From IMG/VR virus record IMGVR_UViG_3300004151_000006, positions 222,689 through 286,688 of that record: DNA of 64,000 nucleotides; one strand, written 5' to 3'. The position numbers and the translations under genes were made by a program. The notes under the pieces were generated by a model, which saw only the letters and a list, made by a program, of their open reading frames with translations, did no database searches and had not been told where the DNA came from. This document shows, piece by piece, positions 3,017 to 32,895 of this stretch; position 1 is the first letter of the stretch, and the number at the start of each line of letters is the position of its first letter.

Positions 3017-3217
3017 ATGTCCAATTCAACAGCAAGTCAAATTAATTTATCTGGAGTGAATACTGATTTTGATGGAGATGAAATACTTTACATTAAAATA
3101 CAAAAACCACGTAAATGGTTATCTGGTAAAGAAAATAAACGTATCCATAATAAAATTACTAAACGTGGTCGTCCATTTAATATTAAAAATATAAATAGAT
3201 TTCCAAAGTTAAATTAA
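3017..3217 (+). CDS. Small protein carrying an RNAP beta-prime catalytic-loop-like motif (NTDFDGD) and a basic tail
   Basis: 66 aa; LSGVNTDFDGDEI; fills the gap before a hairpin; no clear SD. Confidence 0.55.
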   Translation: MSNSTASQINLSGVNTDFDGDEILYIKIQKPRKWLSGKENKRIHNKITKRGRPFNIKNINRFPKLN

Positions 3218-3225
3218 TGGATAGG

Positions 3226-3254
3226 AGGAGGACCACCATAATGGTGGTCCTCCT
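3226..3254. terminator. Intergenic hairpin
   Basis: AGGAGGACCACCAT-A-ATGGTGGTCCTCCT. Confidence 0.55.
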
Positions 3255-3300
3255 ATCTACTTTATATTTTTTAATAAAAGTACGACATTCATTACGCTAT

Positions 3301-3362
3301 AAATATATATCATCTATGCGAAGACACATAGATGATGATGTCTCGGGGACTCGACATGATCA
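3301..3362 (+). repeat. Promoter-overlapping double inverted-repeat element, copy 1 of 3
   Basis: TATATATCA-TCTATG-CGA; ATCATCTATG/CATAGATGAT and ATGTC/GACAT stems; homologous to 27288-27350 and 61226-61300. Confidence 0.75.
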
Positions 3363-3462
3363 TTTGTGTGAATCAAATCGAATATCATCACATGGTGTGA
3401 TGAATACGATGGGTCATATAACCCAAATACTTTTAGTCTTAAACTTTCTCAGGAGTATACTC

Positions 3463-5607
3463 ATGGCTAAGATCATCTTTCTTATCATGGTGTCAATGTT
3501 GTTAGCAGATCATAGCTTTGGTCAGACCAAAAACAATGATCTCCCCACAGTGGAAGAAGTACAGGATAATATCCAAAGATCTGGTAAGCAGTGGACAGCT
3601 AAACGCAATAGATTCATGGATATGAGTCAGGCTGAGATCGATGCCACACATGGAGCAGATGATTGGTCTACTCTCTCCAGAGATATGGATCTCAAAGGTT
3701 TAGAGGGTTCTCCATATGACAAAGATGTCACTGGTGTCCTCACTGATAATCCCCTTCCATCAGCACATGATTGGAGGAATCATAATGGAAAAGATTATAC
3801 TACTCCAACCAAATATCAATCCAGCTGTGGTGCATGTGTCACATTTGCAACAGTTGCTATATGGGAAACACTCCTTAAGATTCAGTACTTGGATGAAAGA
3901 CCTTCATTCAATCCGGATCTCAGTGAACAGTTTATAGTTTCATGTCCATTACCGAAATCTTGTTTTGGAGTCAATCCAACTTTTACAATACCGGATATGG
4001 TACAAAACGGTACTTATTCGGAGACATACATCCCATACATTGCAAAGCCAGTACCTTGCAGTGAAGTGACAAGCGGTGTTGATCTTACAAAGATTGGGCA
4101 TTATCGTGTTATGAATTATGAACATGTGGTTGTGTATGAACCCGGTGGAGATGATGTGAGTATTGACATGTTAAAACGTATGTTGGTGGAGATTGGACCA
4201 TTTTTCACAGTGATGATGCAATACGATGATTTCTATCTTTATGCGGGTGGAGTATATTCCACAACACCAACTGCGAGTTATCGTGGGCTTCATGCCGTCT
4301 GTGTGATTGGGTATGATGATGCTGAACAATGTTTCATTGTGAAAAATTCATGGGGAGATTGGTGGGGAATAAATGGTTATTTTAAGATAGCCTATTCAGA
4401 AGCTACAAAATTATCCCGTACTACATTTGGCTTAGATACATGGGCATTTTCTGGTGCTGTCATTGATCGTGAAGAACCAGAGCAAGAGATACCCCCAATA
4501 GCCAAAGTCATAAACTTTCCCACAGGTACAATATATGCACATGATCGGGTGTACAATGTAACTTCTGAACCAGCAACTGCAGTATCATTTGCTTTTCGTA
4601 CTGATGGTGGTACCTGGAGTGAACAGATACCCATTTTAGGATCTTTGTGGATCTATGATCCCACTGATGGTCCACATACACTTGAAGTGATTACATGTAG
4701 TGTATCTGGTGCTTGTCAATCTAAAAATGATCCCACTACATATCATTGGATCAATGATACTACACCTCCAGAATTTATCAATATCACCAATCCACCAGCT
4801 GCTATCACTGATGTCACATCTTACGTATTCAATGTCACTGCGAGTGCAGATACTGTAAAATATATGTGGGCATCTGATTTAATAAGTGGCTGGTCTGCTA
4901 TGCTACCAATATCAAATGCAACTATCACTTTAAATGATGTCCCCGATGGTAAACATTATATTATTCTGGTAGCCAGTGATGTAATCGATAATTACAGTGA
5001 GCACACTCGGGTGGAATGGACGGTATCGAGTAAAATCACAGCATTGTTAAGTGATCTCCCAAATATCAAAACTACAGATACTTCAACACGGATCACGGTA
5101 TCTTCTAATTCATCAAAATACATTGGATATCGATATCGTCTTGATGGTAGTATGTGGTCTGCAACTGCAGATAAAGATACAAAGATACAGTTATCTGGGT
5201 TATCAACAGGTGTACATACTCTTGAAGTAATTGCAGTGGGGAGTGACGGTAGTATTCAAGATGAAACTGCTACTTCAATGTATGCTTGGATAATTGAAGA
5301 AGCCGCTGCAGCTGTAGCAGTATTGCAAAATCCACCTGATTCAGTATCTACCGCATCGAAATATCAACTGTATGTTGGTGGGGAAAATACCGTGGCATAT
5401 AAATATTCTATCGATGGTCAACCTTTATCACAGGAGTATGATATCAACACACCTATCAATTTGACACTTTCATCGGGCCTGCACATACTCCGGTTGTCAG
5501 GAAAGAATAATGCTGGTGTATGGCAAGAAAGTTATACCACTAACAGTTGGACAGTCAAACGGTCTACTGTAAACCTTGGTGCAGTCTATCAGCTATTATT
5601 GAATTAA
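3463..5607 (+). CDS. Secreted papain-like (C1A) cysteine protease with C-terminal beta-sandwich repeats
   Basis: AGGAG SD at 3451; signal peptide MAKIIFLIMVSMLL; QSSCGAC, GLHAVCVIGY and KNSWG motifs; repeated YxYxxDG...GxHTLEV modules. Confidence 0.9.
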   Translation: MAKIIFLIMVSMLLADHSFGQTKNNDLPTVEEVQDNIQRSGKQWTAKRNRFMDMSQAEIDATHGADDWSTLSRDMDLKGLEGSPYDKDVTGVLTDNPLPSAHDWRNHNGKDYTTPTKYQSSCGACVTFATVAIWETLLKIQYLDERPSFNPDLSEQFIVSCPLPKSCFGVNPTFTIPDMVQNGTYSETYIPYIAKPVPCSEVTSGVDLTKIGHYRVMNYEHVVVYEPGGDDVSIDMLKRMLVEIGPFFTVMMQYDDFYLYAGGVYSTTPTASYRGLHAVCVIGYDDAEQCFIVKNSWGDWWGINGYFKIAYSEATKLSRTTFGLDTWAFSGAVIDREEPEQEIPPIAKVINFPTGTIYAHDRVYNVTSEPATAVSFAFRTDGGTWSEQIPILGSLWIYDPTDGPHTLEVITCSVSGACQSKNDPTTYHWINDTTPPEFINITNPPAAITDVTSYVFNVTASADTVKYMWASDLISGWSAMLPISNATITLNDVPDGKHYIILVASDVIDNYSEHTRVEWTVSSKITALLSDLPNIKTTDTSTRITVSSNSSKYIGYRYRLDGSMWSATADKDTKIQLSGLSTGVHTLEVIAVGSDGSIQDETATSMYAWIIEEAAAAVAVLQNPPDSVSTASKYQLYVGGENTVAYKYSIDGQPLSQEYDINTPINLTLSSGLHILRLSGKNNAGVWQESYTTNSWTVKRSTVNLGAVYQLLLN

Positions 5608-6073: not shown

Positions 6074-6127
6074 AGTCAATAGGATATCCCACTGACTAAT
6101 CGTCTTAACATCCGAAAGGAGAGCATC

Positions 6128-6328
6128 ATGGCTACTACCTTTACGGGACTCCTTGATCGTGAACCGATCGTCGGGGTCCTCCCCGAATTTTGGTGGCACG
6201 ATGAGACCCGTCCTGGTTTTACCCTGGTGCTCGACCAGGATGTCCAGGACCAAATCAATACTGGAAACTGTGACTGGACAGCTATGGCTGACAGTCTTGG
6301 TGCCCAGGCTATAGGGGCTGCCGCATGA
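6128..6328 (+). CDS. Hypothetical small protein
   Basis: AAGGAG SD; GC-richer codons. Confidence 0.7.
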   Translation: MATTFTGLLDREPIVGVLPEFWWHDETRPGFTLVLDQDVQDQINTGNCDWTAMADSLGAQAIGAAA

Positions 6329-6636
6329 ACACCTCCATTATCCCAATGAGGAGACCGCTCTCTTCTCCTCCCATGCAACTGAAAGAAGCTGCCAAATCCA
6401 GCATGAATCGACTCATGCTGGCTGAGATGACTTGTCGAAAGGCGGGTCATCGGATCCGGGTCCTACGAATAGCTTATCGCATGACCCGTGAGGACATGGC
6501 CCAGCGGGTGGGTCTTACCCCCAGTCAGATTGAGGAACTGGAAAGCTGCAAGGGGAATACTTGCAGAAATCTCCTCAAACAAGTGGCTTCCTTCTTCAAA
6601 GTGCCGGTCGACGAGCTGGCACTTGACTGTCAGTAG
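6325..6636 (+). CDS. XRE-family HTH regulator
   Basis: GHRIRVLRIAYRMTREDMAQRVGLTPSQIEELE...VASFFKVPVDEL. Confidence 0.85.
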   Translation: MNTSIIPMRRPLSSPPMQLKEAAKSSMNRLMLAEMTCRKAGHRIRVLRIAYRMTREDMAQRVGLTPSQIEELESCKGNTCRNLLKQVASFFKVPVDELALDCQ

Positions 6637-6641
6637 GGTCA

Positions 6642-6677
6642 ATGGGATGGGTACCCCATTTGGGGTACCCATCCCAT
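6642..6677. terminator. Intergenic hairpin
   Basis: 17-bp stem with 2-nt loop. Confidence 0.55.
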
Positions 6678-6701
6678 GTCACATGGTACTCATATTTTTT
6701 G

Positions 6702-6722
6702 ATATATACATTATAGTTCTGA
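6702..6722 (+). promoter_or_regulatory. Putative early promoter
   Basis: TATACATTA-TAGTTC-TGA. Confidence 0.55.
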
Positions 6723-6751
6723 TATCAATACAAAATTCCACGGAGGAACAC

Positions 6752-7084
6752 ATGCTTAGTGAAGAACAAAAACTCCCCATCTTCAACTATGGAAAGATCG
6801 TGGTATGGCGAGTATCATACTTCCGAAAGGATGATACTACGCTTCATGATAACCTTTTTACCAACCATGATTTCAGTCTGCAGTTTCTTGGTGGGGGTTG
6901 GCCACTCACTGAAAATGAAGAATTCCAGTTTATTCAAGAACTTCTCGGCACCAAACGGTGGTATCCTCAAATCAAATCTTATATCGAAATGGTCCGGATC
7001 CAAAAGATCCAACTCGACTTCGGTCGGGATGAAAATGTCAGATTCAAGGAAACCGTCACCATCATCGGCAACTGGACCCATTGA
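6752..7084 (+). CDS. Hypothetical protein
   Basis: Start moved to ATG 6752 behind GGAGG. Confidence 0.7.
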   Translation: MLSEEQKLPIFNYGKIVVWRVSYFRKDDTTLHDNLFTNHDFSLQFLGGGWPLTENEEFQFIQELLGTKRWYPQIKSYIEMVRIQKIQLDFGRDENVRFKETVTIIGNWTH

Positions 7085-7208: not shown

Positions 7209-10200
7209 ATGTTGACTATGCAGGACTTTTTCTTTGAATGTGATGATATTGAAACAAATATCATCTCCAATGAAATGTTTAACTATCCAAGATTTAAACT
7301 TAATTATCATAACTGGAAGTATTCCTTCTTGACTAATAATTTTTTTGACATTGGTACAATGCAATTGCCATGGGATGCTACGTATCATACTGCAGATAAT
7401 TGGTTTGGTGGCGTACAACAGGACTATCCAAATATAGTCAATGATCCTTTTATCTCTAACGAAATGTATTATAAATGGATCTATCATCAAACTATATTTC
7501 AATTAAATGGTCCTATTCAATATGATACTAAATACAACTATTTGACTAGTGGGTTGTCTACTATCTTAAATGCATTTCGATCACAATATAAAGCACAGTT
7601 TCGATATCTTCAAAAATTAGAAGACACTCCAAGAAAGAAAGAATCTCTCACTATCATTAATTACAATCCTTTATTTAGATGTTACACATTTGGTGCATTG
7701 CAATATTTTAAGAAAGTAAATTTGATATTATCTACTATGTTTAATACAGTAGCTCACATGATTGATATGTATCCAGATAAACATCAATATATCTTGATCC
7801 CATGGAATAATGAAATCTATACTCAAGATCAATTTACACGTACAAAGAAAAAGATCGATATCTCTTCATTGAGAAATCCCAATAGTTTTCATTTTATTTT
7901 TATGGTCTATTTGATGAATTTCATTGATCCTAATACTGATCTTGGACTCTTTAATCAATATCCAGAAAAGTACTGGAAAGAAACTAATTTAGTATTTCGA
8001 AATGGTAATAAAGCCACTATCTTTAATTTAGAAGATCTCAAGACTCTTAATGATAAAAATAGAGCCTATCTCAAGGTAGTATCGCATCTCAATATCTTAT
8101 CTACCATAGGGAGCAGTACTATAGTACTGGATACCTCTGAAGTAGATGGTATCTCTGGACCAACAGATCGTATCCCAGTGATCACTGAGACTAAATGTAC
8201 TATCTCATTACCTGATATCACTACAGTACCTTTAGATAAGACTAATCCTGAAGTCACTGATAAATCAGAGAGTGTCTCTAAAGATCCAGTACCTATCGTA
8301 GATACTACACAGAGTATCATGCCTAGCAGTATCATTGGTACAACCAAATCAGTGATCCAAAAGACTTTTATCCCTATGGTAAAATCCACAGTATCTATTA
8401 TGCCTAAAGTGATCTCTAAATCAGATACACCAAATCAAATATTAGAAGACACTAAACCTGTGATGAGAAATCTCATTCCACAATTAGCTTCTAATATCAC
8501 CCAGATAGAATCAGAGACTGATCCCAATGTAATCAAACAGCGTAGTAAAGAATATTTAGAAGACATTGATGCACAAGCTGTAACATATATTGATAATAGA
8601 GAAGATCTCACCCCAAAACAAAAAGAAAGACTCAAGACTGTAGCAAAGAAATATAAACAAGTCACTATTGGTGAAGAGACTCTTCAAGATATCATCCTTA
8701 AAAACAATGATGTACTCATTGATGAAGATCCACCACAGTCTGTGATAGATACTTTACCTGATAAGACTATGGCTAAATCAAAAGCATTTCATTTTGATAA
8801 AGCTTATATCCATAAAACTATGAAAAAAGACTTAGCCAGCATTGCTGTAAACTTTAATAAACTTGGTATGTTTTTGACAGATATTAAGACTTCACAGACT
8901 ATTAATGAATTGACACAATCTGAAGAATACACTTTTAAGTTTGAAGATGTCCAAGGTAAATCACATACTGTCAAATTCAGCGTGCCTATCATTGATAGTA
9001 ATGGATATTGTTATATCAACGGTGTCAAAAAGTATTTGAAGAAACAAATGATCAATATCCCAATTTGTAAGATAGGTGAGAATAAGGTTTCTATGGTCTC
9101 CAATCAGAATAAAGTATTGATCTTGCGTAATGAAACTAAAGCTCATAGTTTTGATACACAGATAGATAAAATAGTAGAACTTGGAAAATCAGTACTTAAT
9201 ATAATCTATGGTACACTGGATCTCAATCTTTCTTTAGCTTATGAATATGTCTCCATTGCACAAAAATATAATACCATTACTATTAAATCACAAGATGGTA
9301 AATCACATACTTTATGTTTTGATTATTATAATAGATTTAAAGATATTGCTGATGTAGCACTACATTCTAAATTAGATGCATTGGAGAAACAATATGGTAC
9401 ACTCTTTGGTAAAGATGGTCATACTGGATATTATTTTATTGATACTAATAACTTAGTCAGTTTGATTACATTGGATAGAAAAGATATCACACCTTCAGAT
9501 GTGGTATCTATTGTAGATATCTTTAAGACTACATATCCTAAAGAGTTAGCTAGTAAGATAGGTTTCATCACAGAATGGATAGATATTAACTTAGTCTCTA
9601 AACCTTTACCTGTTGGATTTATCTTAGCATACCGATATGGTCTAGTCAACATGATGGATCACCTTGGGGTGAAATATAAGCTCTTAGCTAAACGTGGTAA
9701 TAGTGTGTTAGAAGAGAGTGAATTCTCAGGTGAGAATGTTATTTCTGCTACTGAGTCTTTTGATACTTTGACTATGGATAAAGTGATCAATATTGATACT
9801 CGTAGGAAATGGAAGATCGATGATGTCAAACATCTTGAACTTTTAGAAAAGTACAATATATCTAAAACTGAATGTATCATCAGTGGTAGTGCTGCTATGA
9901 TAGCACATCGATATCCGAACTGTATCAACAATGATCTTGATATTGTGGTGACTGATAGAGTATATGCTAAACTTAAAAAGGATACTACAAATTTTTCAGT
10001 ACATAAAGCACGTGATGGTATTGGTACTGATATAAAATTGGTCAGCAAAGATGAGAAACTTGAGATCACTAAATATTTCCATGCTTTATCTGAAGAATAT
10101 ACTTTTGATGTGGTGAAAAAAGAAAGTGTGAATGTCATTGATGAATATATGTTCACTGATTTGGATTTCTTATTTAAAATGTATACCAAACTCAATAGAC

Positions 10201-11174
10201 CTAAAGATCAAGATAAGATCAAATGGTTGACGGAACATCAAGGTAAGACAGTAGCTGCCAATGAATCCCTGATATCACATGTGACTGATAAAATCATCTA
10301 TATTGAAGATGAAGCACATCATTTGGTGAATGCTAATGAAGCACTCACTGTAGATAAGTACACTTACACCCCTGGGGATATAGTCATCAAATTCAAAGAT
10401 TGTAATTTAGTCTTCAATAGGTATCCCATGTATCAATCTTTGATCATGTGTGGGCTCGATCATTTCAATACCCAAGCATATACCTTTGATGAATTTAATA
10501 TGAAAGATGTATATTACTCACTCATGGAAGATAGGGGTATCAAATCTAACTACCTTAAAGCTGTTAATAGTTTCTTTGATCTCTTTATGGACCCTATCAC
10601 CAAAGATGTACTTCAGCAGATGGGTGAACCAACTAATGTACAAGATCTCCTGATCAGAGCCAGTGTATTACTTACTACCAAAGATCATAAAGAGGCTTCA
10701 TCTATAGCCAACCACCGTATCCGTAGCTATGAACAATTCAATGCTATCATCTATAATGAAATGGCTAGAGCCTATGCAGCCTATCAAGTGGGTAGAGGTA
10801 AAGGTAATACTTTCAGTGTGAATCCCAATGCTGTATTCCAACGTATCATCCAGAACCCATCATTCACTATCGTAGAAGATATCAATCCTATCCAGGAATT
10901 AAAAGAAAGAGCTGGATTTACTTTTGCTGGTGTGGGTGGTCGTACATCTGAATCTTTTGTAGTGGATGATAGACGGTATCCTGAAGATGGTATTGGTATC
11001 ATCTCTGAATCTACAGTCGATAATGCTAAGGTCTCCATGAATGCTTATCTCACTGTTGATCCAACTATAGCTAATACTCGTGGTATCATTGATATTGAAG
11101 CTTTAAATAAATTAAGTTCTAGTAATGTACTCAGTGTCACTGCACTTAATGCACCATGTGCAATGCATGATGAT
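7209..11174 (+). CDS. Phage multisubunit RNA polymerase beta subunit (phiKZ gp178-like, virion RNAP), exon 1; contains nucleotidyltransferase insert
   Basis: DINPIQELKE..TFAGVGGR, GIISESTVDNAKV and PCAMHDD (beta HDDANR region); joins exon 2 to give about 1704 aa. Confidence 0.88.
9810..10229 (+). other. In-frame Pol-beta-superfamily nucleotidyltransferase domain inside RNAP beta
   Basis: ISGSAAM, DLDIVV, LEI and RPKD..KIKWL; homologous to 31179-31586. Confidence 0.85.
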
Positions 11175-11554
11175 GGAGATGTTGAATACACAGAAGATTC
11201 AGCATTATCTCTCTGTCCCACCAAATAGTGATATTTGGATGGTATCTCCCCTAATTGCTGGGATACCCTTAGAGCCATTCTACCTAAGCGGAGTGTGAAA
11301 ACACACACGTGTCGAAAGACAGGTTGGAAAAGTGAATGGATTGGGTAATCAGCAGCGAAGTCCCTAAAGACACTATGTCCATGGGATGTGTTCAACGACT
11401 GACCGCTTATCACGGTGTACACACTGAGTGGTGTGGAAATGGGGAGCACCCCAAGTGGGTGAAGGTATAGTCTCATCTGCATTGAAAGATGCAGCAGTAC
11501 AGTATATTTATACTGTACGGGATTGTAGGTAACGCTACAGTCCGAAGACACATG
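11175..11554 (+). ncRNA. Group I self-splicing intron (IA2-like), no ORF
   Basis: P AATTGCTGGGA (11253), Q AATCAGCAG (11347), R GTTCAACGACTGA (11390), S AAGGTATAGTC (11462); P3 CTCCCC/GGGGAG; exon ends in U and intron in G; splicing restores HDD-SKRISF in frame. Confidence 0.92.
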
Positions 11555-12703
11555 AGCAAACGCATAAGTTTTATATCTACCCAGATGAGTCATGTGGTGG
11601 CTACTAAAGACCTTGATCTTTGTAGAGTCCGTACTGGATATGAAAATATGATAGGACAACAATGTAGTAGTACATATGTTGGTATAGCAAAACAAGATGG
11701 TGTAATCACACAAGTAGATAGAGCTAATAATATCCTTAGAGTGGATTATAAAGATGGAACAGCTGATGTGTATAGTTTTGGTGAACAATACACCAATATC
11801 TCTGGTATGTATATTACACAACATCTCATTTGTGTCGTAGACCAGGGTGATAAAGTAAAGAAAGGTGATATACTCTGTTTCAATGATCAATATTTTAAAA
11901 TGGATAAATATACTAAACAATTAAATGCTGGACATGGTGTGTTAGCTAAAGTGGTACTTATGGAGACCGATAATACACTTGAAGACAGTAATGCTATCAC
12001 TAAACAGTTTGGTAAAAGACTTACCATCACACCCACACATACTCGAGATATTGTATTGACTAAAAATAGTGTGATACATCAATATCTTACAATAGGTACA
12101 CATGTAAAGAATACTGATACTATATTGGTGTTTGAAGATGAAGATCTTGGCGATATGGGATCACTCACTGGTGGGGATATCTCAACTTTAGAGATGTTAA
12201 AGACACTTAATAAAAATATGCCTAAAGCTAAACATAGTGGTGAAATAGTCAAGATAGAGGCTTTTTATGCCTGTCCTATATCTGAGATGGGTGAATCTGT
12301 AGCTAAACTTGTCACTGAATGTAATAAATCTAAATTAACTAAATATAAGTTCTCTCGTGGTACCAATATGGAATATGATTATATTCCGCCCACAGTACTT
12401 CCTGAAAGGACTAAATATAAAGGTAATGAATTTGATAAGGATACGGTAGTCATTCAGTTTTATATCAAAGAGGATATAGCACATGGTGTTGGTGATAAAG
12501 CTGTACTTGGAAATCAATTAAAAAGTACCTCTAATGAAGTATTAGAAGAACCTATTCTTTCTGAATCTGGTATAGAGATAGATGTCGTATTTGGTACTGC
12601 TAGTGTAGCAAATCGTGTTGTACTTGGATGCTTTTTATCTGGTAGTGCATCTAGAGTATTGGAAGAATTACAATATCAAGCTGTAGATATGTATTTTAAT
12701 TAA
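11555..12703 (+). CDS. RNA polymerase beta subunit, exon 2
   Basis: SKRISFISTQMSH, VKKGDIL, EDS, GDKAVLGNQLKS and IDVVF..SVANR motifs. Confidence 0.88.
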   Translation, partial: SKRISFISTQMSHVVATKDLDLCRVRTGYENMIGQQCSSTYVGIAKQDGVITQVDRANNILRVDYKDGTADVYSFGEQYTNISGMYITQHLICVVDQGDKVKKGDILCFNDQYFKMDKYTKQLNAGHGVLAKVVLMETDNTLEDSNAITKQFGKRLTITPTHTRDIVLTKNSVIHQYLTIGTHVKNTDTILVFEDEDLGDMGSLTGGDISTLEMLKTLNKNMPKAKHSGEIVKIEAFYACPISEMGESVAKLVTECNKSKLTKYKFSRGTNMEYDYIPPTVLPERTKYKGNEFDKDTVVIQFYIKEDIAHGVGDKAVLGNQLKSTSNEVLEEPILSESGIEIDVVFGTASVANRVVLGCFLSGSASRVLEELQYQAVDMYFN

Positions 12704-12713
12704 CTACTGATAG

Positions 12714-12749
12714 AGATGGATGTAGGGGCATATGCCCCTACATCCATCT
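12714..12749. terminator. Perfect 36-bp palindrome
   Basis: AGATGGATGTAGGGGCAT|ATGCCCCTACATCCATCT. Confidence 0.6.
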
Positions 12750-12755
12750 GCATTG

Positions 12756-12777
12756 AATATATATATTATTCACATGA
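12756..12777 (+). promoter_or_regulatory. Putative early promoter
   Basis: TATATATTA-TTCACA-TGA. Confidence 0.65.
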
Positions 12778-12835
12778 TACAATGTATTTATTTTTAAGGA
12801 TCACTATCAATGATTTGAAATGGAGGTAAATCCAT

Positions 12836-13672
12836 ATGGGTAATGATTCAACAAATCATACAAAATTGATTCATAGTATATTAAATAATTTAGAAGATAC
12901 TGCCTATGGTCAGAAAAGAGAAATGATGCATGAGTTATATAACACCGATATCTATTGCCCATCAATTACTCCAATGAAAATACCATCATGTAAATCAGGA
13001 GTATTATCTATAATGAAAACATTTCCACTAGATATGAATCTTGGTAAAACTCTATATTTCAATGAATTGGAGATACGTAAATATGAAGCTTTTGATAGTG
13101 ATGTAAAGATACCAGAATCTATCACTGTAGGAAGCATTGCTTTATATTTATCTGAGAGTAAACAATGTAGTGTTATGGAACTTTACAGTACAATGGATCC
13201 TTATCAGAAATATAAATTAGCTATAGTGTTTAAAGATAATATGTTCATTGAACCATTGAAGATCTTTTTATTTCAAAAGTTATACAGTTATATGGGAGGG
13301 AGTCCATTATATCAGGATATACACAGTGTGTTTGGTAATGACAGTATCAATCTACGTGCGGATCCACGACATATATATGTAAAATGTAATAAAGATACAA
13401 TAAAACCACATGAGGTAACTAAATATATTTATTATGATAAATCAAATACATCATCAGAAACATTGAGTGGACGTTGGGATGATACATCCAGAGTAGAGTA
13501 TTTAAATTATAAACATGAATTGTATAAAGATGATACCTGCATACTACTTGAGATCTTACATATTGAAGATATAACTATATTGCATAAACATATGCATACA
13601 TCTAGACAATACACAAAGTTAGATAGCTGGTTAGGTGTAAATCTCAATATACGGAGTATCTATGGGATATAG
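12836..13672 (+). CDS. Hypothetical protein (paralog of next gene)
   Basis: GGAGGT SD; shares EIRKYE..IP and C-terminal WxGVxLxxxxIxGI with 13662-14675. Confidence 0.8.
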   Translation: MGNDSTNHTKLIHSILNNLEDTAYGQKREMMHELYNTDIYCPSITPMKIPSCKSGVLSIMKTFPLDMNLGKTLYFNELEIRKYEAFDSDVKIPESITVGSIALYLSESKQCSVMELYSTMDPYQKYKLAIVFKDNMFIEPLKIFLFQKLYSYMGGSPLYQDIHSVFGNDSINLRADPRHIYVKCNKDTIKPHEVTKYIYYDKSNTSSETLSGRWDDTSRVEYLNYKHELYKDDTCILLEILHIEDITILHKHMHTSRQYTKLDSWLGVNLNIRSIYGI

Positions 13673-14675
13673 TGGATGTGAGTTATTAAAACCCATATCA
13701 AGTACAAATCAAGATTTGATATATCGACCATATTTAATAAAAATACAAGATATAAACAAAGAAATAAAAGAGATAGAAGAAATATTAGAATGTAATAGAA
13801 GAATATATTACGATCGGTGTAATGATGGTTTTGATAATAAAAGTCTTGTAGAAAATATTGATTTATTAGTTAAAAAATTAGAAAAGAAAAGAATTGAATG
13901 GTGTGAATATGACAAGAAAATCAAGGAGGTAAAATTAATGAGTGTGACAAATCACATGAAAGATGAGATCGCATATCCATTTGGTATTAATATCAACAAT
14001 GCTATTCTCATAGATCCCATTGAAATCAGGAAATATGAATGCTTAGATACATGGTTGGCTATCCCAGATCAATTTGAAATCAAATGTATTGGTATGTATA
14101 GTACTAAAAATGGAAATAGTCGTGTTGTTGAATTGTATAATGGTACAGATATACTTAACAGTGAATACAAGATGAGTATTTTGACTACAGATGCAAAAGC
14201 TAATGCTATTAGAGAAATTATATTCTTTGAAAGAGCAGAGATCGGTAATGTGGTTACAGATATTGAACAATATCGTACATTACGAAAGATGTGTGGTGAT
14301 GGATATATCACTTTAAATTGGGAAAATGATGAAGTGCCAATGGAACGTATTTATACTCGTATATTGGATAATCAAGATCTGAGTAAATCATCAGAAAAGA
14401 CCATCTCTAATCATAAACTATTTTACAATAAAGTCATTGATCCAAAGAATAATAAAGAATATGCACATGAATGGAGTTTCCAATGTCCGATTGATAGTGT
14501 ACCATATATCACAATGTTGTATGAAGATAAAGATACTCAAGTTGGTGAATTGGTAGAATTTGATTGTTTCAATTATAGAGAAGGATATCGCGGTAGCGAT
14601 TTTAATGCAAGGCATGTAATTATTTGGGTGGGGGTAAAACTTAGTTTGACAAATATTAAAGGTATCTATGTTTAA
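13662..14675 (+). CDS. Hypothetical protein, coiled-coil N-terminus plus paralogous domain
   Basis: 337 aa; second in-frame start with AGGAGGT SD at 13938. Confidence 0.75.
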   Translation: MGYSGCELLKPISSTNQDLIYRPYLIKIQDINKEIKEIEEILECNRRIYYDRCNDGFDNKSLVENIDLLVKKLEKKRIEWCEYDKKIKEVKLMSVTNHMKDEIAYPFGININNAILIDPIEIRKYECLDTWLAIPDQFEIKCIGMYSTKNGNSRVVELYNGTDILNSEYKMSILTTDAKANAIREIIFFERAEIGNVVTDIEQYRTLRKMCGDGYITLNWENDEVPMERIYTRILDNQDLSKSSEKTISNHKLFYNKVIDPKNNKEYAHEWSFQCPIDSVPYITMLYEDKDTQVGELVEFDCFNYREGYRGSDFNARHVIIWVGVKLSLTNIKGIYV

Positions 14676-14681
14676 GGAGGG

Positions 14682-15662
14682 ATGATGAAAAAATATAGTT
14701 GGATAACTTTATTTATTTTATCAATAAGTCTCATTGCTAATATCACTTATGCTAAAGGTAGTAGTAGTAGTAGTAGTAGTTCTAGTGGAAGATCATCGTC
14801 ATCATTTTCTTCTAGTAGTAAATCTAGCAGTAGCTTCAGTAGTAGTAGTAAACCAAGTACACCCTCATATACTTCATCATCTAGTAAACCCACTGGTATT
14901 ACATCATCTAATTCAAGTAATACACCTAGCAGTACTATACCCAAGACACCAATAATTTATAGTAATACAACCAAGTCAACCACCATCTCTAGTGGTAGTA
15001 ATAATACAATCAAACCAAATAATCCACCTAAACTCAATTATATTCAGAATGCAAATACACCCACTAAAAAGACTGAAGATGTGAAAAGTTATCGTACGGA
15101 GAAAGCTCGATATACTTTTAATACTTCAACTCCTCCAGTGACTACAAGATCAACTATCCCAACGAGTAATCGTAGCTGGTCTAGTTATGATGAATACAAA
15201 TCTAATCAACGTAGGTATTATACTGAGCACAATTGGAATCCTCCTGTTTATATTTACAACACCTATCCTTCATTTGGTGGATTCTCTAATCCATGGTTAT
15301 TTTTCATGTTAGGTAATATGTCATCGAATTTCTTTTATCATAGACAAGATGATCCTGGTGTAAAGACATTCTTAGCTGAAGCAGAAAGATTATCTACTGA
15401 TAATAAAGAATTAAAAGATCAATTAGCTAAAGTAAAAGCTGATATGGAAAAATTGAAACAAGATGGTACTACTATAGAAAAAGAATATTTTCCCAAAGAT
15501 CAGGATCCTGATATAGCCACTGAATTGGAAATCGATGATGATGATGAAAGTAGTGATTTTGGTACTATCTTAGTATCTATCTTAATCATCGGTATGTTTA
15601 TTTGGATAGGTGTTGTAGCTATACGTATTTTACGTAGACATAAACAAAAGAGAGATTGGTAA
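14682..15662 (+). CDS. Secreted/membrane-anchored Ser/Thr-rich protein
   Basis: Signal peptide, poly-Ser (AGT repeats), coiled coil, C-terminal TM followed by basic tail. Confidence 0.8.
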   Translation: MMKKYSWITLFILSISLIANITYAKGSSSSSSSSSGRSSSSFSSSSKSSSSFSSSSKPSTPSYTSSSSKPTGITSSNSSNTPSSTIPKTPIIYSNTTKSTTISSGSNNTIKPNNPPKLNYIQNANTPTKKTEDVKSYRTEKARYTFNTSTPPVTTRSTIPTSNRSWSSYDEYKSNQRRYYTEHNWNPPVYIYNTYPSFGGFSNPWLFFMLGNMSSNFFYHRQDDPGVKTFLAEAERLSTDNKELKDQLAKVKADMEKLKQDGTTIEKEYFPKDQDPDIATELEIDDDDESSDFGTILVSILIIGMFIWIGVVAIRILRRHKQKRDW

Positions 15663-15787
15663 TGTATGAATGGATCGACCATTTATTGTTTGATAATCCA
15701 AGGCTTACTATCTATACATTACTTGGTATAATTGTTGGGATGATTATAAGTCTTATATACACTGTAATTCGCAGTAGATTCGAATAA
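15662..15787 (+). CDS. 41-aa single-TM peptide (not in ORF track)
   Basis: MYEWIDHLLFDNPRLTIYTLLGIIVGMIISLIYTVIRSRFE; TAATG coupling to upstream gene. Confidence 0.55.
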   Translation: MYEWIDHLLFDNPRLTIYTLLGIIVGMIISLIYTVIRSRFE

Positions 15788-15807
15788 ATCCTAAATACGG
15801 AGGTAGC

Positions 15808-16692
15808 ATGTTTTCACCAATTGCGGTTTTTGCAAGTATGATAGTGTTACTTGTTATAAGTCTTGGTGTGGGATGGCTTGTTAATGACATTACACAACCC
15901 TCTAACAGAAGGAGAAAGACCATGGGCCTGTTCGGAAAGCTGTTTGGCGTCAAAGTCGATCGCATCAAGGATGCCATCCTCAAGAGTGATGTCCTTGGTA
16001 ACCCCAATGACATTTCTGAAGCACAGCTGCGGGAATACCAGGAAAAGTGGGAAGAAATCACCACTCGTCTTGGCACTGCCACTCAGCGTCTGGCCAAAGA
16101 ACAGCGGGATGTGACTGAGCTTGAAGAAGCTATTCGCATCCACGTCATCGGTGCCAAGAAGATGCAGGAAAAGCGCGATGCTGCCGGCACCGAAGAAGAA
16201 AAGAATCGATTCCAGGTCAAGATCGACCAGATGGTCGGCGACATCAAGTCCATGCAGGCCAAAATGGACATCGAAAAGGCTGAAGCCACTACTGCTTCCA
16301 GCCATGTCAATCTGTTGCAGGAAGCGGCAGATAAATGCATGGAACGCATCAAGTCCCATCGCAAGGCTATCCAGGATGCCAAAGATAACCTTGAGTCTGC
16401 CAAGCTCAAGCGTGACATGGCCAAGGATCGTGAAGAAGATGCCAAGCTGGTCTCTGGCCTGGTAGATCCCAATGCCATCGGCATCAACAGTGCCCTGGAT
16501 GCCATCAACAAAGTGGCCCAGGATCTGGAACAAGAAGCTACCATCGCCAACCAGCGGGCTGACATGCTCCAGTCTGATGTGGCCAAGGATTCTCCGGATG
16601 CTGACATCCGTCAGGTCTTGGAAGAAGCCAAGAGCACCACTCCCAAGGGTACTCCTGAGTCCACTGACGACTTCTTGTCCAAGTTCAAATAG
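15808..16692 (+). CDS. pspA: PspA/IM30 (ESCRT-III-like) family protein; second start at 15922
   Basis: MGLFGKLFG amphipathic helix followed by long coiled coil; SDs before both 15808 and 15922; GC-rich codons. Confidence 0.72.
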   Translation: MFSPIAVFASMIVLLVISLGVGWLVNDITQPSNRRRKTMGLFGKLFGVKVDRIKDAILKSDVLGNPNDISEAQLREYQEKWEEITTRLGTATQRLAKEQRDVTELEEAIRIHVIGAKKMQEKRDAAGTEEEKNRFQVKIDQMVGDIKSMQAKMDIEKAEATTASSHVNLLQEAADKCMERIKSHRKAIQDAKDNLESAKLKRDMAKDREEDAKLVSGLVDPNAIGINSALDAINKVAQDLEQEATIANQRADMLQSDVAKDSPDADIRQVLEEAKSTTPKGTPESTDDFLSKFK

Positions 16693-16702
16693 CACATGCT
16701 AA

Positions 16703-16736
16703 GGATAGGGTGCACCCACATGGGTGCACTCTATCC
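16703..16736. terminator. Intergenic hairpin
   Basis: GGATAGGGTGCACCCA-CA-TGGGTGCACTCTATCC. Confidence 0.55.
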
Positions 16737-16760
16737 ACCTTGTTATCCATTTATTTTTTA

Positions 16761-16780
16761 AATATATATTATTTATTTGG
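16761..16780 (+). promoter_or_regulatory. Putative early promoter
   Basis: TATATATTA-TTTATT-TGG. Confidence 0.55.
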
Positions 16781-18632: not shown

Positions 18633-19340
18633 ATGTATATCCAAATCACTGATCGTTGTAATATGTCATGTGTACATTGTGGTCATAATTGTACTACTGT
18701 TGGTAATGACATGGATGTTAAAACTTTTGCACAGTCCTGTAAATTGGCAGTTAAATTTCACTATGATATTTGTATTGGTGGAGGAGAACCAACACTCCAT
18801 AAAGATTTTGAAAGATTTCTTGAAATCAGCTTGGATCATTCTGATAATGTCAATTTGGTGACTAATGGAACCAACACCAAAATGTCCTTATTTTTAGCAG
18901 AATTGGCTGCTGACGGTATTATTCATTGCACACTATCTCTTGATAAATATCATGATCGTTCTATGGTTAGCCAAGATGTGATCAATGCATTTCAAAAGGA
19001 CACTACCAACAAAAAAGATCATCGACATATACAGGATGTCTCTGAACCAGGACACCGGCTAGTATATGCTGGACGAACAATACTCTCCAAAACAAAAGGT
19101 CTCATTGATCAGGAAATCAGAGATGATTGTTTTGGTCCTGGATTCCATGTGAAACCAGATGGTCGTTTATATCACTGTGCTTGTCAAATGGTCTCATACA
19201 ACACAGTGTTCAACCCCACTTTTCATCGAAACATTTATCGCACACGGTATACCTGTTCTGAACGGGATCCATGGCGCAAGTATTTGCGTATGACCAATGA
19301 TGATGAAGATTGGGAAAAGATGGTTTGGAGGGGATATTAA
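18633..19340 (+). CDS. Radical SAM protein with twitch/SPASM-like C-terminus
   Basis: CNMSCVHC, GGGEPTL, VTNG, SLD; C-terminal C...DGRLYHC. Confidence 0.9.
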   Translation: MYIQITDRCNMSCVHCGHNCTTVGNDMDVKTFAQSCKLAVKFHYDICIGGGEPTLHKDFERFLEISLDHSDNVNLVTNGTNTKMSLFLAELAADGIIHCTLSLDKYHDRSMVSQDVINAFQKDTTNKKDHRHIQDVSEPGHRLVYAGRTILSKTKGLIDQEIRDDCFGPGFHVKPDGRLYHCACQMVSYNTVFNPTFHRNIYRTRYTCSERDPWRKYLRMTNDDEDWEKMVWRGY

Positions 19341-29055: not shown

Positions 29056-29091
29056 ACACCTACACCGGGGGATATCCCCCGGTGTAGGTGT
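29056..29091. terminator. Perfect 36-bp palindrome
   Basis: ACACCTACACCGGGGGAT|ATCCCCCGGTGTAGGTGT. Confidence 0.55.
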
Positions 29092-29179
29092 GATATTAAA
29101 TATATATTTTTTCATACGAAATATAAACATATATTATTATCATGTATTGGATAGATCATCACTACAGGAGCATCTCACG

Positions 29180-30610
29180 ATGTTGACTATATCTAAAGAT
29201 CCTAGGGATACCACAGATCCTTCAGAAATAGATCCATTCTACGATAACACCATATCAAATGAACAATATTTCCTTCAAGCTATAATAAATGGAAGATTTA
29301 TATTGGAAGGTGATGATCATATCATCTATGATACTAAACGAAATATACGTACTATTTTTGATTTTAATAAAGTATTACCTGAAGGTGTCAAAAAGTCAAA
29401 TTACCTCAAATATGAAATCAATCTTTATTCACCCATTAAGAAACGTAGAAAGATCTATCTTCATAAGTTTGTATGGATGTACTATACGAGATCATTAGTC
29501 CCAGAGGGACATGCCATCATACACAAGGATGATAATATCTACAATTGTCAATATTCCAATCTCAAGATGCAATACCCGAGGATAGAAGATCCATCTTTCT
29601 TTGATACTACGATATCTGATGTTGACTGGTACTATAGTCAAGTACTCCAAGATCGATTTGAGATGAGAGACGATGGCAATCAAATCTATGATAAAAGACG
29701 AGATAAAGTGACTACTCCTGGAAAACGAATGGGTGAAGAACATGATCCTGATAATACTAAAAAGAAATTTGAATATAACATCGTGGCTACCAATAAAGTT
29801 CTCTATAATAGAAAGATTCAATATCATAGATTGGCTTGGATGATCTATCATAAGCAAGCTATACCAGAAAGTTATGAGATTCACCATATTGATCATAATA
29901 GACAAAATAACAGTAAAGATAACTTACAACTACTTTCTAAGAGTGAACATACGCAGTTGCACCAACAAGATCTTGAATATGTGGATGCCAGAACTGTATT
30001 AAGAAAATACCTACTTTCATTAAAGAGAAAATATTATCTTACTGATCATCAACTATGTTTTACATGTAAGCGTTATCTACCAATAAAAGAATTTGATATA
30101 ATTATTGAAGGGTCATATTGTTGCAATGAATGTATGTCTTTAAAGAAAGCTGGTTTGGAGAATAATATTTATAAGTTTTCAGAAGGTATCTTAGATGATA
30201 CAACGGTGTTAAATATTCGATTTGGATTTCACATAATGAATAAAAAGTTTAGATCCTTACTTTATAAATATCAAGATACTGGCATTACTAAAGAGCAGCT
30301 TAAAGATCTATTGCTTGGAAATACATATACTCATTTACCTAAATTGTTTGGTATCAGAGAATTCCCATATAGGTCAGAACTAAGTATTGATAGATTAGAA
30401 TATTGTCATATACAAAACGCTATGACCTATGGTGGATTTACTTTAGAAGAAATATCAAAGATGTTTGGTAGACCTGAGATGATGGTAGAATATGTATTAT
30501 TAACTGGACAGTATAAAGAAAAATTAGAACTTGAAATGGAGATACAAAGTGTAATCAATAAAATTCGGTATGGTGTATCATCTGAATGTAATATTAATTA
30601 TTTTGCATAG
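29180..30610 (+). CDS. Free-standing HNH homing endonuclease with duplicated HNH module
   Basis: YLHKFVW...IIHKDDNIYNCQYSNL and YHRLAW...IHHIDHNRQNNSKDNL; start behind AGGAG. Confidence 0.85.
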   Translation: MLTISKDPRDTTDPSEIDPFYDNTISNEQYFLQAIINGRFILEGDDHIIYDTKRNIRTIFDFNKVLPEGVKKSNYLKYEINLYSPIKKRRKIYLHKFVWMYYTRSLVPEGHAIIHKDDNIYNCQYSNLKMQYPRIEDPSFFDTTISDVDWYYSQVLQDRFEMRDDGNQIYDKRRDKVTTPGKRMGEEHDPDNTKKKFEYNIVATNKVLYNRKIQYHRLAWMIYHKQAIPESYEIHHIDHNRQNNSKDNLQLLSKSEHTQLHQQDLEYVDARTVLRKYLLSLKRKYYLTDHQLCFTCKRYLPIKEFDIIIEGSYCCNECMSLKKAGLENNIYKFSEGILDDTTVLNIRFGFHIMNKKFRSLLYKYQDTGITKEQLKDLLLGNTYTHLPKLFGIREFPYRSELSIDRLEYCHIQNAMTYGGFTLEEISKMFGRPEMMVEYVLLTGQYKEKLELEMEIQSVINKIRYGVSSECNINYFA

Positions 30611-32771: not shown

Positions 32772-32895
32772 GTCTACTCCTTTTATTGGATGATGGGATC
32801 TTTCCATCTTATAGCTTTATGGTATACATTGGGATGAAAGAGTCTATCTCTCTTATCCTTATATATAAGACCTTTCAGATAGAGGAGTATCTTAG

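What the first reader, a model, noticed from the sequence alone, without database searches (positions are those of the whole stretch)
14682..16692. Phage membrane module: Ser-rich anchored protein, TM peptide and dual-start PspA/ESCRT-III
Seen: the PspA-like gene has two in-frame starts with good SDs. 15808 (GGAGGT) adds a hydrophobic TM segment, and 15922 (AAGGAG) gives the classical amphipathic N-terminus. Codon usage switches from AT-rich to GC-rich near 15922, suggesting a host-derived gene fused to a phage TM peptide. Upstream are a secreted Ser/Thr-rich protein with a C-terminal anchor and a 41-aa TM peptide. Established: PspA/Vipp1 polymers remodel membranes, and phiKZ-like phages form a membrane-bound early infection vesicle. 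Inference: a phage-controlled membrane remodelling or repair system with anchored and soluble isoforms.
Basis: partly seen in the sequence, partly recalled or inferred. Interest (0 to 1): 0.6.

Follow-up and report, generated by a model that had tools for sequence, protein, structure and literature searches.

The report
Phage PspA-like membrane operon, nested isoforms
A distant phiKZ-like jumbo phage carries an early-type operon with a divergent PspA/ESCRT-III-like membrane protein, probably made in a membrane-anchored and a soluble form, next to a conserved membrane-anchored partner that also accompanies it in bacteria.

Summary
The 294-codon ORF at 15808-16692 has two in-frame starts with SD sequences, a hydrophobic 38-codon extension, and a jump in GC3 from 0.32 to 0.62 at the internal ATG. 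The core misses Pfam PspA_IM30. It belongs to a ~250-aa bacterial family that matches canonical PspA by profile-profile comparison (prob 95.7%, E 1e-8; reversed control 6%). Its model has the a0/hairpin/a4/a5 layout, and Vipp1/PspA are the top fold hits.

The TM extension, the internal Met and a GGAG 5-7 nt upstream recur in two other contigs. The family otherwise starts at the internal Met. The Ser-rich anchored protein is a conserved neighbour, both in these elements and in bacteria, where DUF2491 (YjfK-like) also sits alongside. The 41-aa peptide is not conserved.

The GC-rich codon usage is not a host-transfer signature: it matches the phage's own major capsid and tail-tube genes (r = 0.81), so it more likely marks high expression. 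Two strong hairpins and AR9-type early-promoter motifs frame a five-gene operon (12760-16736).

Verdict: a new variant of a known kind, since phage-encoded PspA was reported in 2026. Two isoforms and a membrane-maintenance role are inferred, not shown.

The parts
12714..12749 (+). Perfect 16-bp hairpin, the likely terminator of the preceding RNA polymerase gene. It marks the upstream boundary of the operon.
   Evidence: Fold dG -32.9 kcal/mol, z -7.4. L002 has an unrelated-sequence hairpin at the homologous place (L002:1-28).
12760..12776 (+). Early-promoter-like motif TATATATTAT-N5-TG. By analogy with AR9, the predicted transcription start is the G at 12776.
   Evidence: The motif occurs 28 times in the genome, always on the + strand. 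The AR9 virion-RNAP early consensus is AAATATATATTAT-(6N)-G (PMC5312081). The same motif sits at L002:43-59 and L151:34-50, ahead of the homologous operons.
12836..13672 (+). 278-aa protein of unknown function, paralogue of the next gene and first gene of the operon.
   Evidence: BLASTP against the 337-aa neighbour gives E 6e-13. No Pfam or PHROG hit.
13662..14675 (+). 337-aa protein of unknown function, second paralogue.
   Evidence: Homologue in L002 (P0006, E 2e-18). The AF2 model is unusable (pLDDT 35).
14685..15662 (+). Bitopic membrane protein: signal peptide, Ser/Thr-rich low-complexity region, conserved aromatic-rich domain, coiled coil, acidic stretch, C-terminal TM helix and a basic tail. 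An alternative ATG lies at 14682.
   Evidence: 47% identical to L002 P0005. Homologues lie next to the PspA-like gene in L142, L015 and L017. Hydropathy. No known family.
15662..15787 (+). 41-aa ORF with one TM segment. Its ATG overlaps the upstream stop (TAATG). It is not conserved in relatives, so its status is uncertain.
   Evidence: Absent in L002, L142 and L151.
15799..15803 (+). SD (GGAGG) of the long isoform, 4 nt before ATG 15808.
15808..15921 (+). 38-codon N-terminal extension: one TM helix followed by NRRRK (positive-inside, so the PspA-like domain would be cytoplasmic). GC3 is 0.32.
   Evidence: The extension is TM-like in P0004 at only about 24% identity. It is absent from 150 other family representatives except P0010.
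15808..16692 (+). Long isoform ORF: 294 aa, TM-anchored PspA-like protein.
15909..15914 (+). Internal SD (AAGGAG), 7 nt before ATG 15922.
   Evidence: A GGAG sits at 5-7 nt before the homologous Met in L002 and L142 although the encoded residues differ. The background rate is 1.5-3.9%.
15922..16692 (+). Short isoform: the ancestral-type core of 256 aa, a divergent PspA/IM30-superfamily protein. GC3 is 0.62, matching the codon usage of the capsid and tail-tube genes.
16703..16736 (+). Perfect 15-bp hairpin, the terminator-like end of the operon.
   Evidence: dG -29.8, z -5.6. L002 has a different-sequence 15-bp hairpin at the same place.
16763..16779 (+). The next early-promoter motif. With the three A at 16760-16762 it matches the AR9 consensus AAATATATATTAT-N6-G exactly. 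It starts the following transcription unit.

Best explanation
The finding lies in a five-gene transcription unit of a distant phiKZ-like jumbo phage (window 12760-16736). Strong hairpins flank the unit and an AR9-type virion-RNA-polymerase (early) promoter motif heads it.

Its last two conserved genes form an envelope module that also exists in bacteria:
1. A bitopic inner-membrane protein. Its Ser/Thr-rich and coiled-coil parts face the periplasm.
2. A divergent member of the PspA/IM30/Vipp1 (bacterial ESCRT-III) superfamily.

In the phage lineage the PspA-like gene gained a 38-codon N-terminal transmembrane extension and kept its ancestral start codon and ribosome-binding site. One gene therefore probably gives two nested proteins:
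- A minor long form, tethered to the cytoplasmic face of the inner membrane.
- A major soluble short form that starts with the amphipathic helix a0.

The inferred mechanism is that the tethered form serves as a built-in membrane anchor or nucleator, the job LiaI does for LiaH and PspB/C do for PspA. The abundant short form polymerises onto it. The result would stabilise, repair or reshape the host cytoplasmic membrane from early in a long infection.

Shown here: the ORFs and signals, their conservation, remote homology to PspA, the gene neighbourhood, and the codon-usage class.

Inferred: early timing, production of both isoforms, polymerisation, and the membrane-protective role.
For: Phage identity:
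- Split multisubunit RNAP genes, a PhiKZ-type major capsid and a 286.7-kb record.

PspA homology:
- The HMM search found 212 relatives of about 250 aa.
- Their profile's best PDB hits are Vipp1/PspA, in register from the DP motif to the C-terminal LAALK (E 0.0037).
- hhalign against 33 canonical PF04012 proteins gives prob 95.7%, E 1e-8 over 230 columns. The reversed control gives 6.3%, E 6e-3.
- The AF2 model (pLDDT 79) has a0, the a1/a2-3 hairpin, a4 and a5.
- The Foldseek top 9 are all Vipp1/PspA.
- The top Atlas shape hit is a PF04012 cluster, TM 0.56.
- The language-model look-alikes are named PspA/IM30.

Isoforms:
- Both starts have an SD.
- The extension stays open and TM-like in P0004 and P0010 despite about 24% identity.
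- GGAG lies 5-7 nt before the internal Met in all three, over different codons.
- The background rate of such SDs at internal ATGs is 1.5-3.9%.
- The long start is weaker. Its SD spacer is 4 nt here and 11 nt in L002. In L142 there is no SD, only a TAATG overlap.
- GC3 steps from 0.32 to 0.62 at the internal ATG, and from 0.49 to 0.67 in L002.

High expression:
- Core RSCU correlates r = 0.81-0.83 with the capsid and tail-tube set and -0.12 with bulk genes.

Partner:
- Homologues of the anchored protein lie next to the PspA-like gene in L002, L142, L015, L017 and G054.
- DUF2491 is adjacent in 8 bacterial loci. This echoes E. coli yjfJ-yjfK.

Operon:
-.
Against: - The protein does not match Pfam PF04012 at all. 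Only 2 of 65 family members match it weakly.
- Fold matches are weak. Foldseek E is 2e-3 or worse, and in the VIA re-alignment Vipp1 (Z 11.6) is tied with unrelated helical hairpins.
- Self-assembly was not supported or refuted.
- The SD-like string in the window is made of AGA/AGG Arg codons. These also serve the positive-inside rule, so it could be a by-product.
- L142 shows no codon-usage step.
- The closest phage relative (L151) has only the short form and no anchored partner. The long form is therefore dispensable in at least one lineage.
- The promoter motif at 12760 deviates from the AR9 consensus just upstream of the core. AR9 vRNAP is reported to be sensitive to single mismatches.
- The host is unknown.
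Confidence: 0.55

Rival explanations
1. Only the long, membrane-anchored protein is made. The internal Met and its SD-like string are a vestige of the ancestral start, or a by-product of Arg/Gly codons. The product is simply a TM-tethered PspA-like protein.
For: The long ORF has its own GGAGG. In the window the SD-like motif is encoded by AGA AGG AGA AAG, the basic residues expected after a TM helix. The gene callers called only the 294-aa product.
Against: GGAG is kept at 5-7 nt before the Met in three lineages over different amino acids (NRRRKT, FGGKS, NGVT), although the proteins are only 27-63% identical. The long start is poorly placed or lacks an SD in L002 and L142. Codon bias starts at the internal ATG.
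Confidence: 0.25
2. The GC-rich core is a recent horizontal transfer from a GC-richer host that has not yet ameliorated, fused to an AT-rich phage TM peptide.
For: There is a sharp GC boundary at the ancestral start. The family is cellular and the bacterial homologues are GC-rich (GC3 0.51-0.75). One other high-GC3 phage gene is a MYG1-type exonuclease, which could be acquired.
Against: The same codon usage characterises the PhiKZ-type major capsid and tail-tube genes (r = 0.81). The anchored partner, linked to the gene in bacteria too, is fully AT-rich (GC3 0.20, r = 0.87 with bulk genes). The GC-rich state is shared by L002 at 63% protein identity. The sister phage copy in L151 has GC3 0.19, and the three copies form one clade (SH-aLRT 98).
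Confidence: 0.12
3. The protein is a generic abundant coiled-coil or structural protein, for example a virion, scaffold or cytoskeletal component. Its likeness to PspA is convergent helical-hairpin similarity, not shared function.
For: Its codon usage is like that of virion proteins. VIA-align ties Vipp1 with YscO, FliJ, SMC and other hairpins. NCBIfam and Pfam give only coiled-coil noise.
Against: The full-length, in-register profile-profile match has a clean reversed control. The PspA hallmarks are conserved: an MG-F amphipathic start, the DP motif and a C-terminal LAxLK. Bacterial members sit beside DUF2491, as E. coli YjfJ does. A promoter motif of the early type heads the operon.
Confidence: 0.08

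Closest known systems
PspA / IM30 (Vipp1) / LiaH: the bacterial ESCRT-III superfamily (PF04012; PMC8281802)
   Same: About 250 aa, with an N-terminal amphipathic helix starting MG-hydrophobic-F, a DP motif, a long a1/a2-3 hairpin, a4/a5 and a C-terminal LAxLK. Homology is detectable profile to profile.
   Different: Below the Pfam threshold: no PF04012 hit. The A3-family profile finds nothing in E. coli K-12 at E <= 1, so neither PspA nor YjfJ is close. The phage has no PspB, PspC or DUF2491. An N-terminal TM fusion is not a usual PspA architecture: over 98% of homologues are single-domain (PMC11237479).
E. coli yjfIJKLMC-type PspA paralogue operon (YjfJ with YjfK/DUF2491)
   Same: Bacterial members of this ~250-aa family lie directly beside a DUF2491 gene in 8 loci. 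yjfJ likewise lies beside yjfK (PMC11237479).
   Different: The gene order differs: DUF2491 comes first, then the optional anchored protein, then the PspA-like gene. The Ser-rich anchored partner is not part of the described yjf operon. The phage carries no DUF2491.
PspA genes of huge phages (bioRxiv 10.64898/2026.10.24.761521)
   Same: A phage with a large genome encodes a PspA-type protein next to membrane-associated genes. The proposed role is management of host membrane stress.
   Different: The IMG/VR genomes in that study were picked with PF04012 at E <= 1e-5, a threshold this protein does not reach. Its huge-phage set came from a structure-based screen, so whether this protein is in it was not checked. 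The text has no 'isoform', 'internal start', 'phiKZ' or 'Chimalliviridae'. The neighbours it lists (Ca-ATPase, SPFH, ABC transporters, DUF350) differ from the partner seen here.
LiaI-LiaH and PspB/C-PspA membrane-anchor pairs (from my own knowledge, not tested here)
   Same: A small TM element holds a PspA-type polymer at the membrane. Here the anchor would be the N-terminal extension of the long isoform.
   Different: Anchor and effector would come from one gene through nested starts rather than from separate genes. No sequence relation to LiaI, PspB or PspC was found.
Dual-start and nested in-frame phage genes, such as lambda S105/S107 (from my own knowledge)
   Same: Two in-frame initiation codons give products that differ only at the N-terminus, which changes membrane behaviour.
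   Different: Here the difference is a whole TM helix of 38 residues, on a cytoplasmic scaffold protein rather than a holin. Neither product has been observed.

Membership tests
PspA/IM30 (Pfam PF04012) | Match to the family HMM above the gathering score | tested here: not met
   No PF04012 hit at E <= 1 for the protein or at E <= 10 in the six-frame genome search. Only 2 of 65 members of its own family hit it, best E 0.002.
PspA/IM30/ESCRT-III superfamily | Detectable homology to bona fide members over the whole domain | tested here: met
   hhalign of the 65-sequence family against 33 PF04012 proteins gives prob 95.7%, E 1e-8 over 230 columns. The reversed control gives prob 6.3%. The profile against PDB puts Vipp1/PspA on top, E 0.0037, in register.
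PspA/IM30/ESCRT-III superfamily | Fold: a0 amphipathic helix, a1/a2-3 hairpin, a4, a5 | tested here: met
   The AF2 model (pLDDT 79) has helices 3-26, 28-87, 91-177, 191-217 and 227-236/248-255. The Foldseek top 9 are Vipp1/PspA. The Atlas top hit is a PF04012 cluster, TM 0.56. Caveat: VIA-align does not separate it from other long hairpins.
PspA/IM30/ESCRT-III superfamily | Homo-polymerisation into rings or rods | tested here: inconclusive
   The three-copy complex prediction gave no answer. This needs biochemistry or cryo-EM.
PspA/IM30/ESCRT-III superfamily | Membrane binding or remodelling | not testable with these tools
   Only the amphipathic a0 (hydrophobic moment 0.94) and the TM extension point that way.
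Classical Psp system (pspFABC) | PspB/PspC membrane partners encoded alongside | tested here: not met
   No PF04024 or PF06667 match in the phage genome at E <= 1.
YjfJ-YjfK type operon | DUF2491 gene adjacent to the PspA paralogue | tested here: not met
   Met for bacterial members of the family (8 loci). Not met for the phage: no PF10679 in the genome.
Nested dual-start gene | Two in-frame starts, each with an SD, conserved in relatives | tested here: met
phiKZ-like jumbo phages with multisubunit RNAPs | Split beta/beta' RNAP genes and a PhiKZ-type capsid protein | tested here: met
   phrog_3148, phrog_2986 and others. PF25620 PhiKZ_MCP. RNAP is 24-28% identical to phiKZ-like phages. A nuclear-shell protein was not looked for properly: one candidate, L010, had no BLAST match.
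AR9/phiKZ-type early (virion RNAP) promoters | AT-rich consensus AAATATATATTAT-(6N)-G ahead of the unit | tested here: met
   The core TATATATTAT-N5-TG at 12760-12776 is one of 28 + strand copies. The 16760-16779 copy matches the consensus exactly. Activity was not tested, and the 12760 copy differs in the bases just before the core.

The most novel reading that the evidence does not exclude
An ESCRT-III-like polymer made by the phage itself acts on a phage-specific membrane structure rather than merely patching the host membrane. It would be transcribed early by the injected virion RNA polymerase and be self-anchoring through a nested TM isoform. Together with its periplasm-facing partner it might shape or seal the membrane-bound early infection vesicle of phiKZ-like phages, or drive another membrane remodelling step of the infection cycle.
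Probability: 0.07. Interest if true: 0.9.

Novelty: new variant of a known kind. Interest (0 to 1): 0.55.

Why it matters
PspA/Vipp1 proteins are the bacterial branch of the ESCRT-III membrane-remodelling superfamily, and how they are recruited to membranes is an open question. Several points here bear on it.

- This phage gene would encode both the polymer subunit and its own membrane tether, through nested starts. That recruitment logic has not been described for the family and is easy to test.
- The work defines a sparsely distributed family of about 250 aa that is invisible to Pfam PF04012. It also defines a new conserved partner, the Ser-rich bitopic protein, in both bacteria and phage-like elements. 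This extends the catalogue of Psp-like envelope systems.
- The phage-PspA survey selected its IMG/VR genomes with PF04012 at E <= 1e-5, a threshold this gene does not reach. Pfam-based searches of that kind therefore undercount phage PspA genes.
- A sharp GC island inside a phage genome can reflect expression-linked codon bias rather than recent transfer.

Tried and rejected
- Direct family scans of the PspA-like protein gave only coiled-coil noise: Pfam, PHROGs, NCBIfam and PDB by sequence.
- tblastn against 50,697 phage records found no match.
- The viral-contig scan with the two phage cores found nothing.
The scan with P0007 found nothing.
- hhalign against a single E. coli PspA sequence was too weak (E 0.064). 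A 33-sequence PspA alignment was needed.
- VIA-align re-ranking did not discriminate PspA from other helical hairpins.
- Complex prediction of three copies of the core gave no answer, which is neither for nor against self-assembly.
No read or RNA evidence was obtained, and read laying was not used.
- The word search for the anchored protein found only itself and the L002 copy. The Atlas gave only unnamed clusters.
- The structure prediction of the 337-aa paralogue failed (pLDDT 35), so no fold search was made.
- The AR9 late-promoter pattern AACA-N6-T[AG] is not enriched in this genome: 326 found against about 280 expected. It was dropped.
- L004, a second sample, is identical in sequence, so no polymorphism test of the extension was possible.
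- I considered and rejected the idea that the aromatic-rich middle segment of the anchored protein is a second TM helix. My hand calculation gives a mean hydropathy of about 0.3, and only the signal peptide and the C-terminal helix pass KD 1.6.
Full report
**Context.** The window is the last 64 kb of a 286,688-bp IMG/VR virus record. It encodes split multisubunit RNA-polymerase beta/beta' genes, which are 24-28% identical to those of phiKZ-like jumbo phages. Elsewhere the genome carries a PhiKZ-type major capsid protein and a phage tail-tube protein. It is therefore a distant phiKZ-like jumbo phage, about 35% GC. The host is unknown.

**The observation.**
- ORF 14682/14685-15662 has a signal peptide, a long Ser/Thr-rich stretch and a C-terminal TM helix with a basic tail.
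- A 41-codon TM ORF follows at 15662-15787. Its ATG overlaps the preceding stop.
- ORF 15808-16692 has GGAGG 4 nt before ATG 15808 and AAGGAG 7 nt before the in-frame ATG 15922.
- Residues 1-30 of the long form are strongly hydrophobic. They are followed by NRRRK, so the rest of the protein would be cytoplasmic.
- The short form starts with an amphipathic MGLFGKLF helix.
- GC rises from about 0.31 to 0.51-0.56 at about 15900 and falls again after 16720. GC3 is 0.32 in the extension and 0.62 in the core.

**Is it PspA?**
- Direct scans fail. Pfam, PHROGs and NCBIfam give no PF04012 hit, and PDB sequences give nothing useful.
- The exhaustive HMM search with the two phage cores found 212 proteins at E <= 1e-3. 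Nearly all are 240-265 aa and align from their first residue to the internal Met of the phage protein.
- A 65-sequence alignment shows a coherent family with an amphipathic N-terminus, a DPETA(S)EA motif, an invariant Gly and a C-terminal S..DRLAALK.
- The profile's best PDB hits are Vipp1/PspA, in register from the DP motif to the C-terminal LAALK (E 0.0037).
- I built an alignment of 33 canonical PF04012 proteins taken from Pseudomonadota genomes. hhalign of the two alignments gives probability 95.7%, E 1e-8 over 230 columns. The column-reversed control gives 6.3%, E 6e-3.
- The AlphaFold model (pLDDT 79) has the expected a0, long a1/a2-3 hairpin, a4 and a5.
- The nine best Foldseek matches are all Vipp1/PspA cryo-EM chains covering nearly the full length, with weak E-values.
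- The best Atlas shape match is a PF04012 cluster, TM 0.56. A language-model look-up names PspA/IM30 clusters.
- VIA-align cannot tell Vipp1 (Z 11.6) from other long hairpins, so fold evidence alone would not suffice.
- Taken together, this is a remote but real member of the PspA/IM30 (ESCRT-III) superfamily that lies outside the Pfam model.

**Where the family lives.**
- About 7 of 301 sampled Pseudomonadota genomes carry a full-length member. E. coli K-12 has none at E <= 1.
- In eight bacterial loci the gene lies directly after a DUF2491 (YjfK-like) gene. This recalls E. coli yjfJ-yjfK (PMC11237479).
- The phage has no DUF2491, PspB or PspC.

**The partner protein.** The Ser-rich anchored protein is not a chance neighbour.
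- Homologues with the same architecture sit immediately upstream of the PspA-like gene in L002 (47% identity) and in L142.
- The same holds in the bacterial contig L015. There the gene callers split it into a 194-aa gene and an antisense ORF.
- Homologues lie a few genes upstream in L017 and close by in G054.
- The shared architecture is a signal peptide with a conserved A|K/R-G cleavage context, an S/G/T-rich region, an aromatic-rich conserved block, a coiled coil, an acidic stretch and a TM helix.
- It belongs to no described family.
- The 41-aa peptide is absent from L002, L142 and L151.

**The two starts.**
- Among 150-odd family representatives, only three have a TM segment: the window protein, P0004 (L002, 63% identical in the core) and P0010 (L142, 27% identical, two TM helices).
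- In all three the ancestral Met is retained and a GGAG lies 5-7 nt upstream. The encoded residues differ: NRRRKT, FGGKS and NGVT.
- Genome-wide, only 1.5% of internal ATGs have a strong SD, or 3.9% counting any 4-mer.
- The long start is less favoured. Its spacer is 4 nt here and 11 nt in L002. In L142 there is no SD, only a TAATG overlap with the partner's stop.
- The closest phage relative, P0007 in L151, has neither the extension nor the partner.
- A quick tree places P0002, P0004 and P0007 together (SH-aLRT 98) and P0010 elsewhere. The TM fusion may therefore have arisen twice (careful search unfinished).
- These facts favour a minor tethered form and a major soluble form. No protein or RNA data could be obtained.

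**The GC switch.**
- Median GC3 of 283 ORFs is 0.245. The top of the distribution holds the major capsid (0.77), the tail-tube protein and other genes, with the PspA-like ORF tenth.
- The core's synonymous codon usage correlates r = 0.81-0.83 with capsid/tail-tube and -0.12 with bulk genes. The partner gene correlates 0.87 with bulk genes.
- L002 keeps the same step. The L151 copy is AT-rich.
- The switch is thus best read as expression-linked codon bias that begins at the internal start. It is not a footprint of recent host transfer.

**Operon and timing.**
- A perfect 16-bp hairpin (12714-12749) is followed by TATATATTAT-N5-TG (12760-16776 region: motif at 12760-12776), then five + strand genes.
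- A perfect 15-bp hairpin (16703-16736) closes the unit. It is followed by AAATATATATTAT-N6-G at 16760-16779.
- The motif occurs 28 times in the genome, always on the + strand.
- It equals the experimentally defined early promoter consensus of the AR9 virion RNA polymerase (PMC5312081).
- L002 and L151 have the same hairpin/motif framing with different hairpin sequences.
- Early transcription is therefore predicted, not shown.
- The first two genes are paralogues of unknown function. Their model was unusable.

**Comparison with what is known.**
- Phage-encoded PspA was reported in October 2026 for 184 huge phages and 667 IMG/VR genomes.
- The IMG/VR genomes there were selected with PF04012 at E <= 1e-5, a threshold this gene does not reach. 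That text has no 'isoform', 'internal start', 'phiKZ' or 'Chimalliviridae'.
- PspA homologues are over 98% single-domain (PMC11237479).
- I therefore class this as a new variant of a known kind.

Noticed in passing
window 11174-11494 (+): A group I intron (Rfam RF00028, 64.5 bits, gathering score 50, E 4e-15) interrupts the large RNA-polymerase subunit gene. ORFs 7209-11228 and 11489-12703 match consecutive parts of one PHROG profile (positions up to 1050, then 1051-1420).
   Followed up: yes
whole genome; in the window at 1143, 12760, 16763, 23596, 54032, 56388: The motif TATATATTA(Y)-N5-TG occurs 28 times and only on the + strand, usually just after a strong hairpin. It equals the AR9 early (virion RNAP) promoter consensus. 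The genome appears to be punctuated into hairpin/promoter-framed units.
   Followed up: partly
genome G000:C1 138579-140924, 147008-148249, 173414-175288, 89255-90136, 56893-57975; window 6076-7084: Codon usage is bimodal. About 15 genes have GC3 of 0.5-0.77 against a median of 0.245. They include the major capsid, the tail tube, a MYG1-type exonuclease (PF03690) and several unknowns, two of which sit right after early-promoter motifs.
   Followed up: partly
window 3217-5607 (+): A 796-aa protein with a papain-family cysteine protease domain (PF00112, E 2e-33), in a stretch of raised GC (0.36-0.41).
   Followed up: no
window 33764-43048 (+): A giant 3094-aa ORF. It was not analysed.
   Followed up: no
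window 29090-30610 (+) and 30666-32807 (-): An HNH endonuclease gene (PF13392, two copies of the motif) lies next to another RNA-polymerase beta-like subunit gene on the opposite strand.
   Followed up: no
window 62345-63820 (+); 18633-19340 (+): An NAD-dependent DNA ligase (PF01653/PF03120), and a radical-SAM protein two genes downstream of the PspA-like gene. The radical-SAM protein is also present at the same relative place in L002.
   Followed up: no
L015:7004-7984 (bacterial contig JBBRUD010000020.1): The bacterial homologue of the Ser-rich anchored protein was mis-called in the public annotation as a 194-aa gene plus a 122-aa antisense ORF over its low-complexity region. The full ORF is 326 aa.
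   Followed up: yes
L143:6322-7908 (G054): One bacterial ORF of about 528 aa matches both the DUF2491 profile (E 6e-26) and the anchored-protein profile (E 2e-11). This suggests a fusion of the two partners in that genome.
   Followed up: partly
L151:80-1024 and 1874-2405: In the AT-rich relative, the protein upstream of the PspA-like gene has an N-terminal multi-TM region and shares only a short YEAFDS..IP motif with the window's paralogues. Several small TM ORFs follow the PspA-like gene.
   Followed up: no
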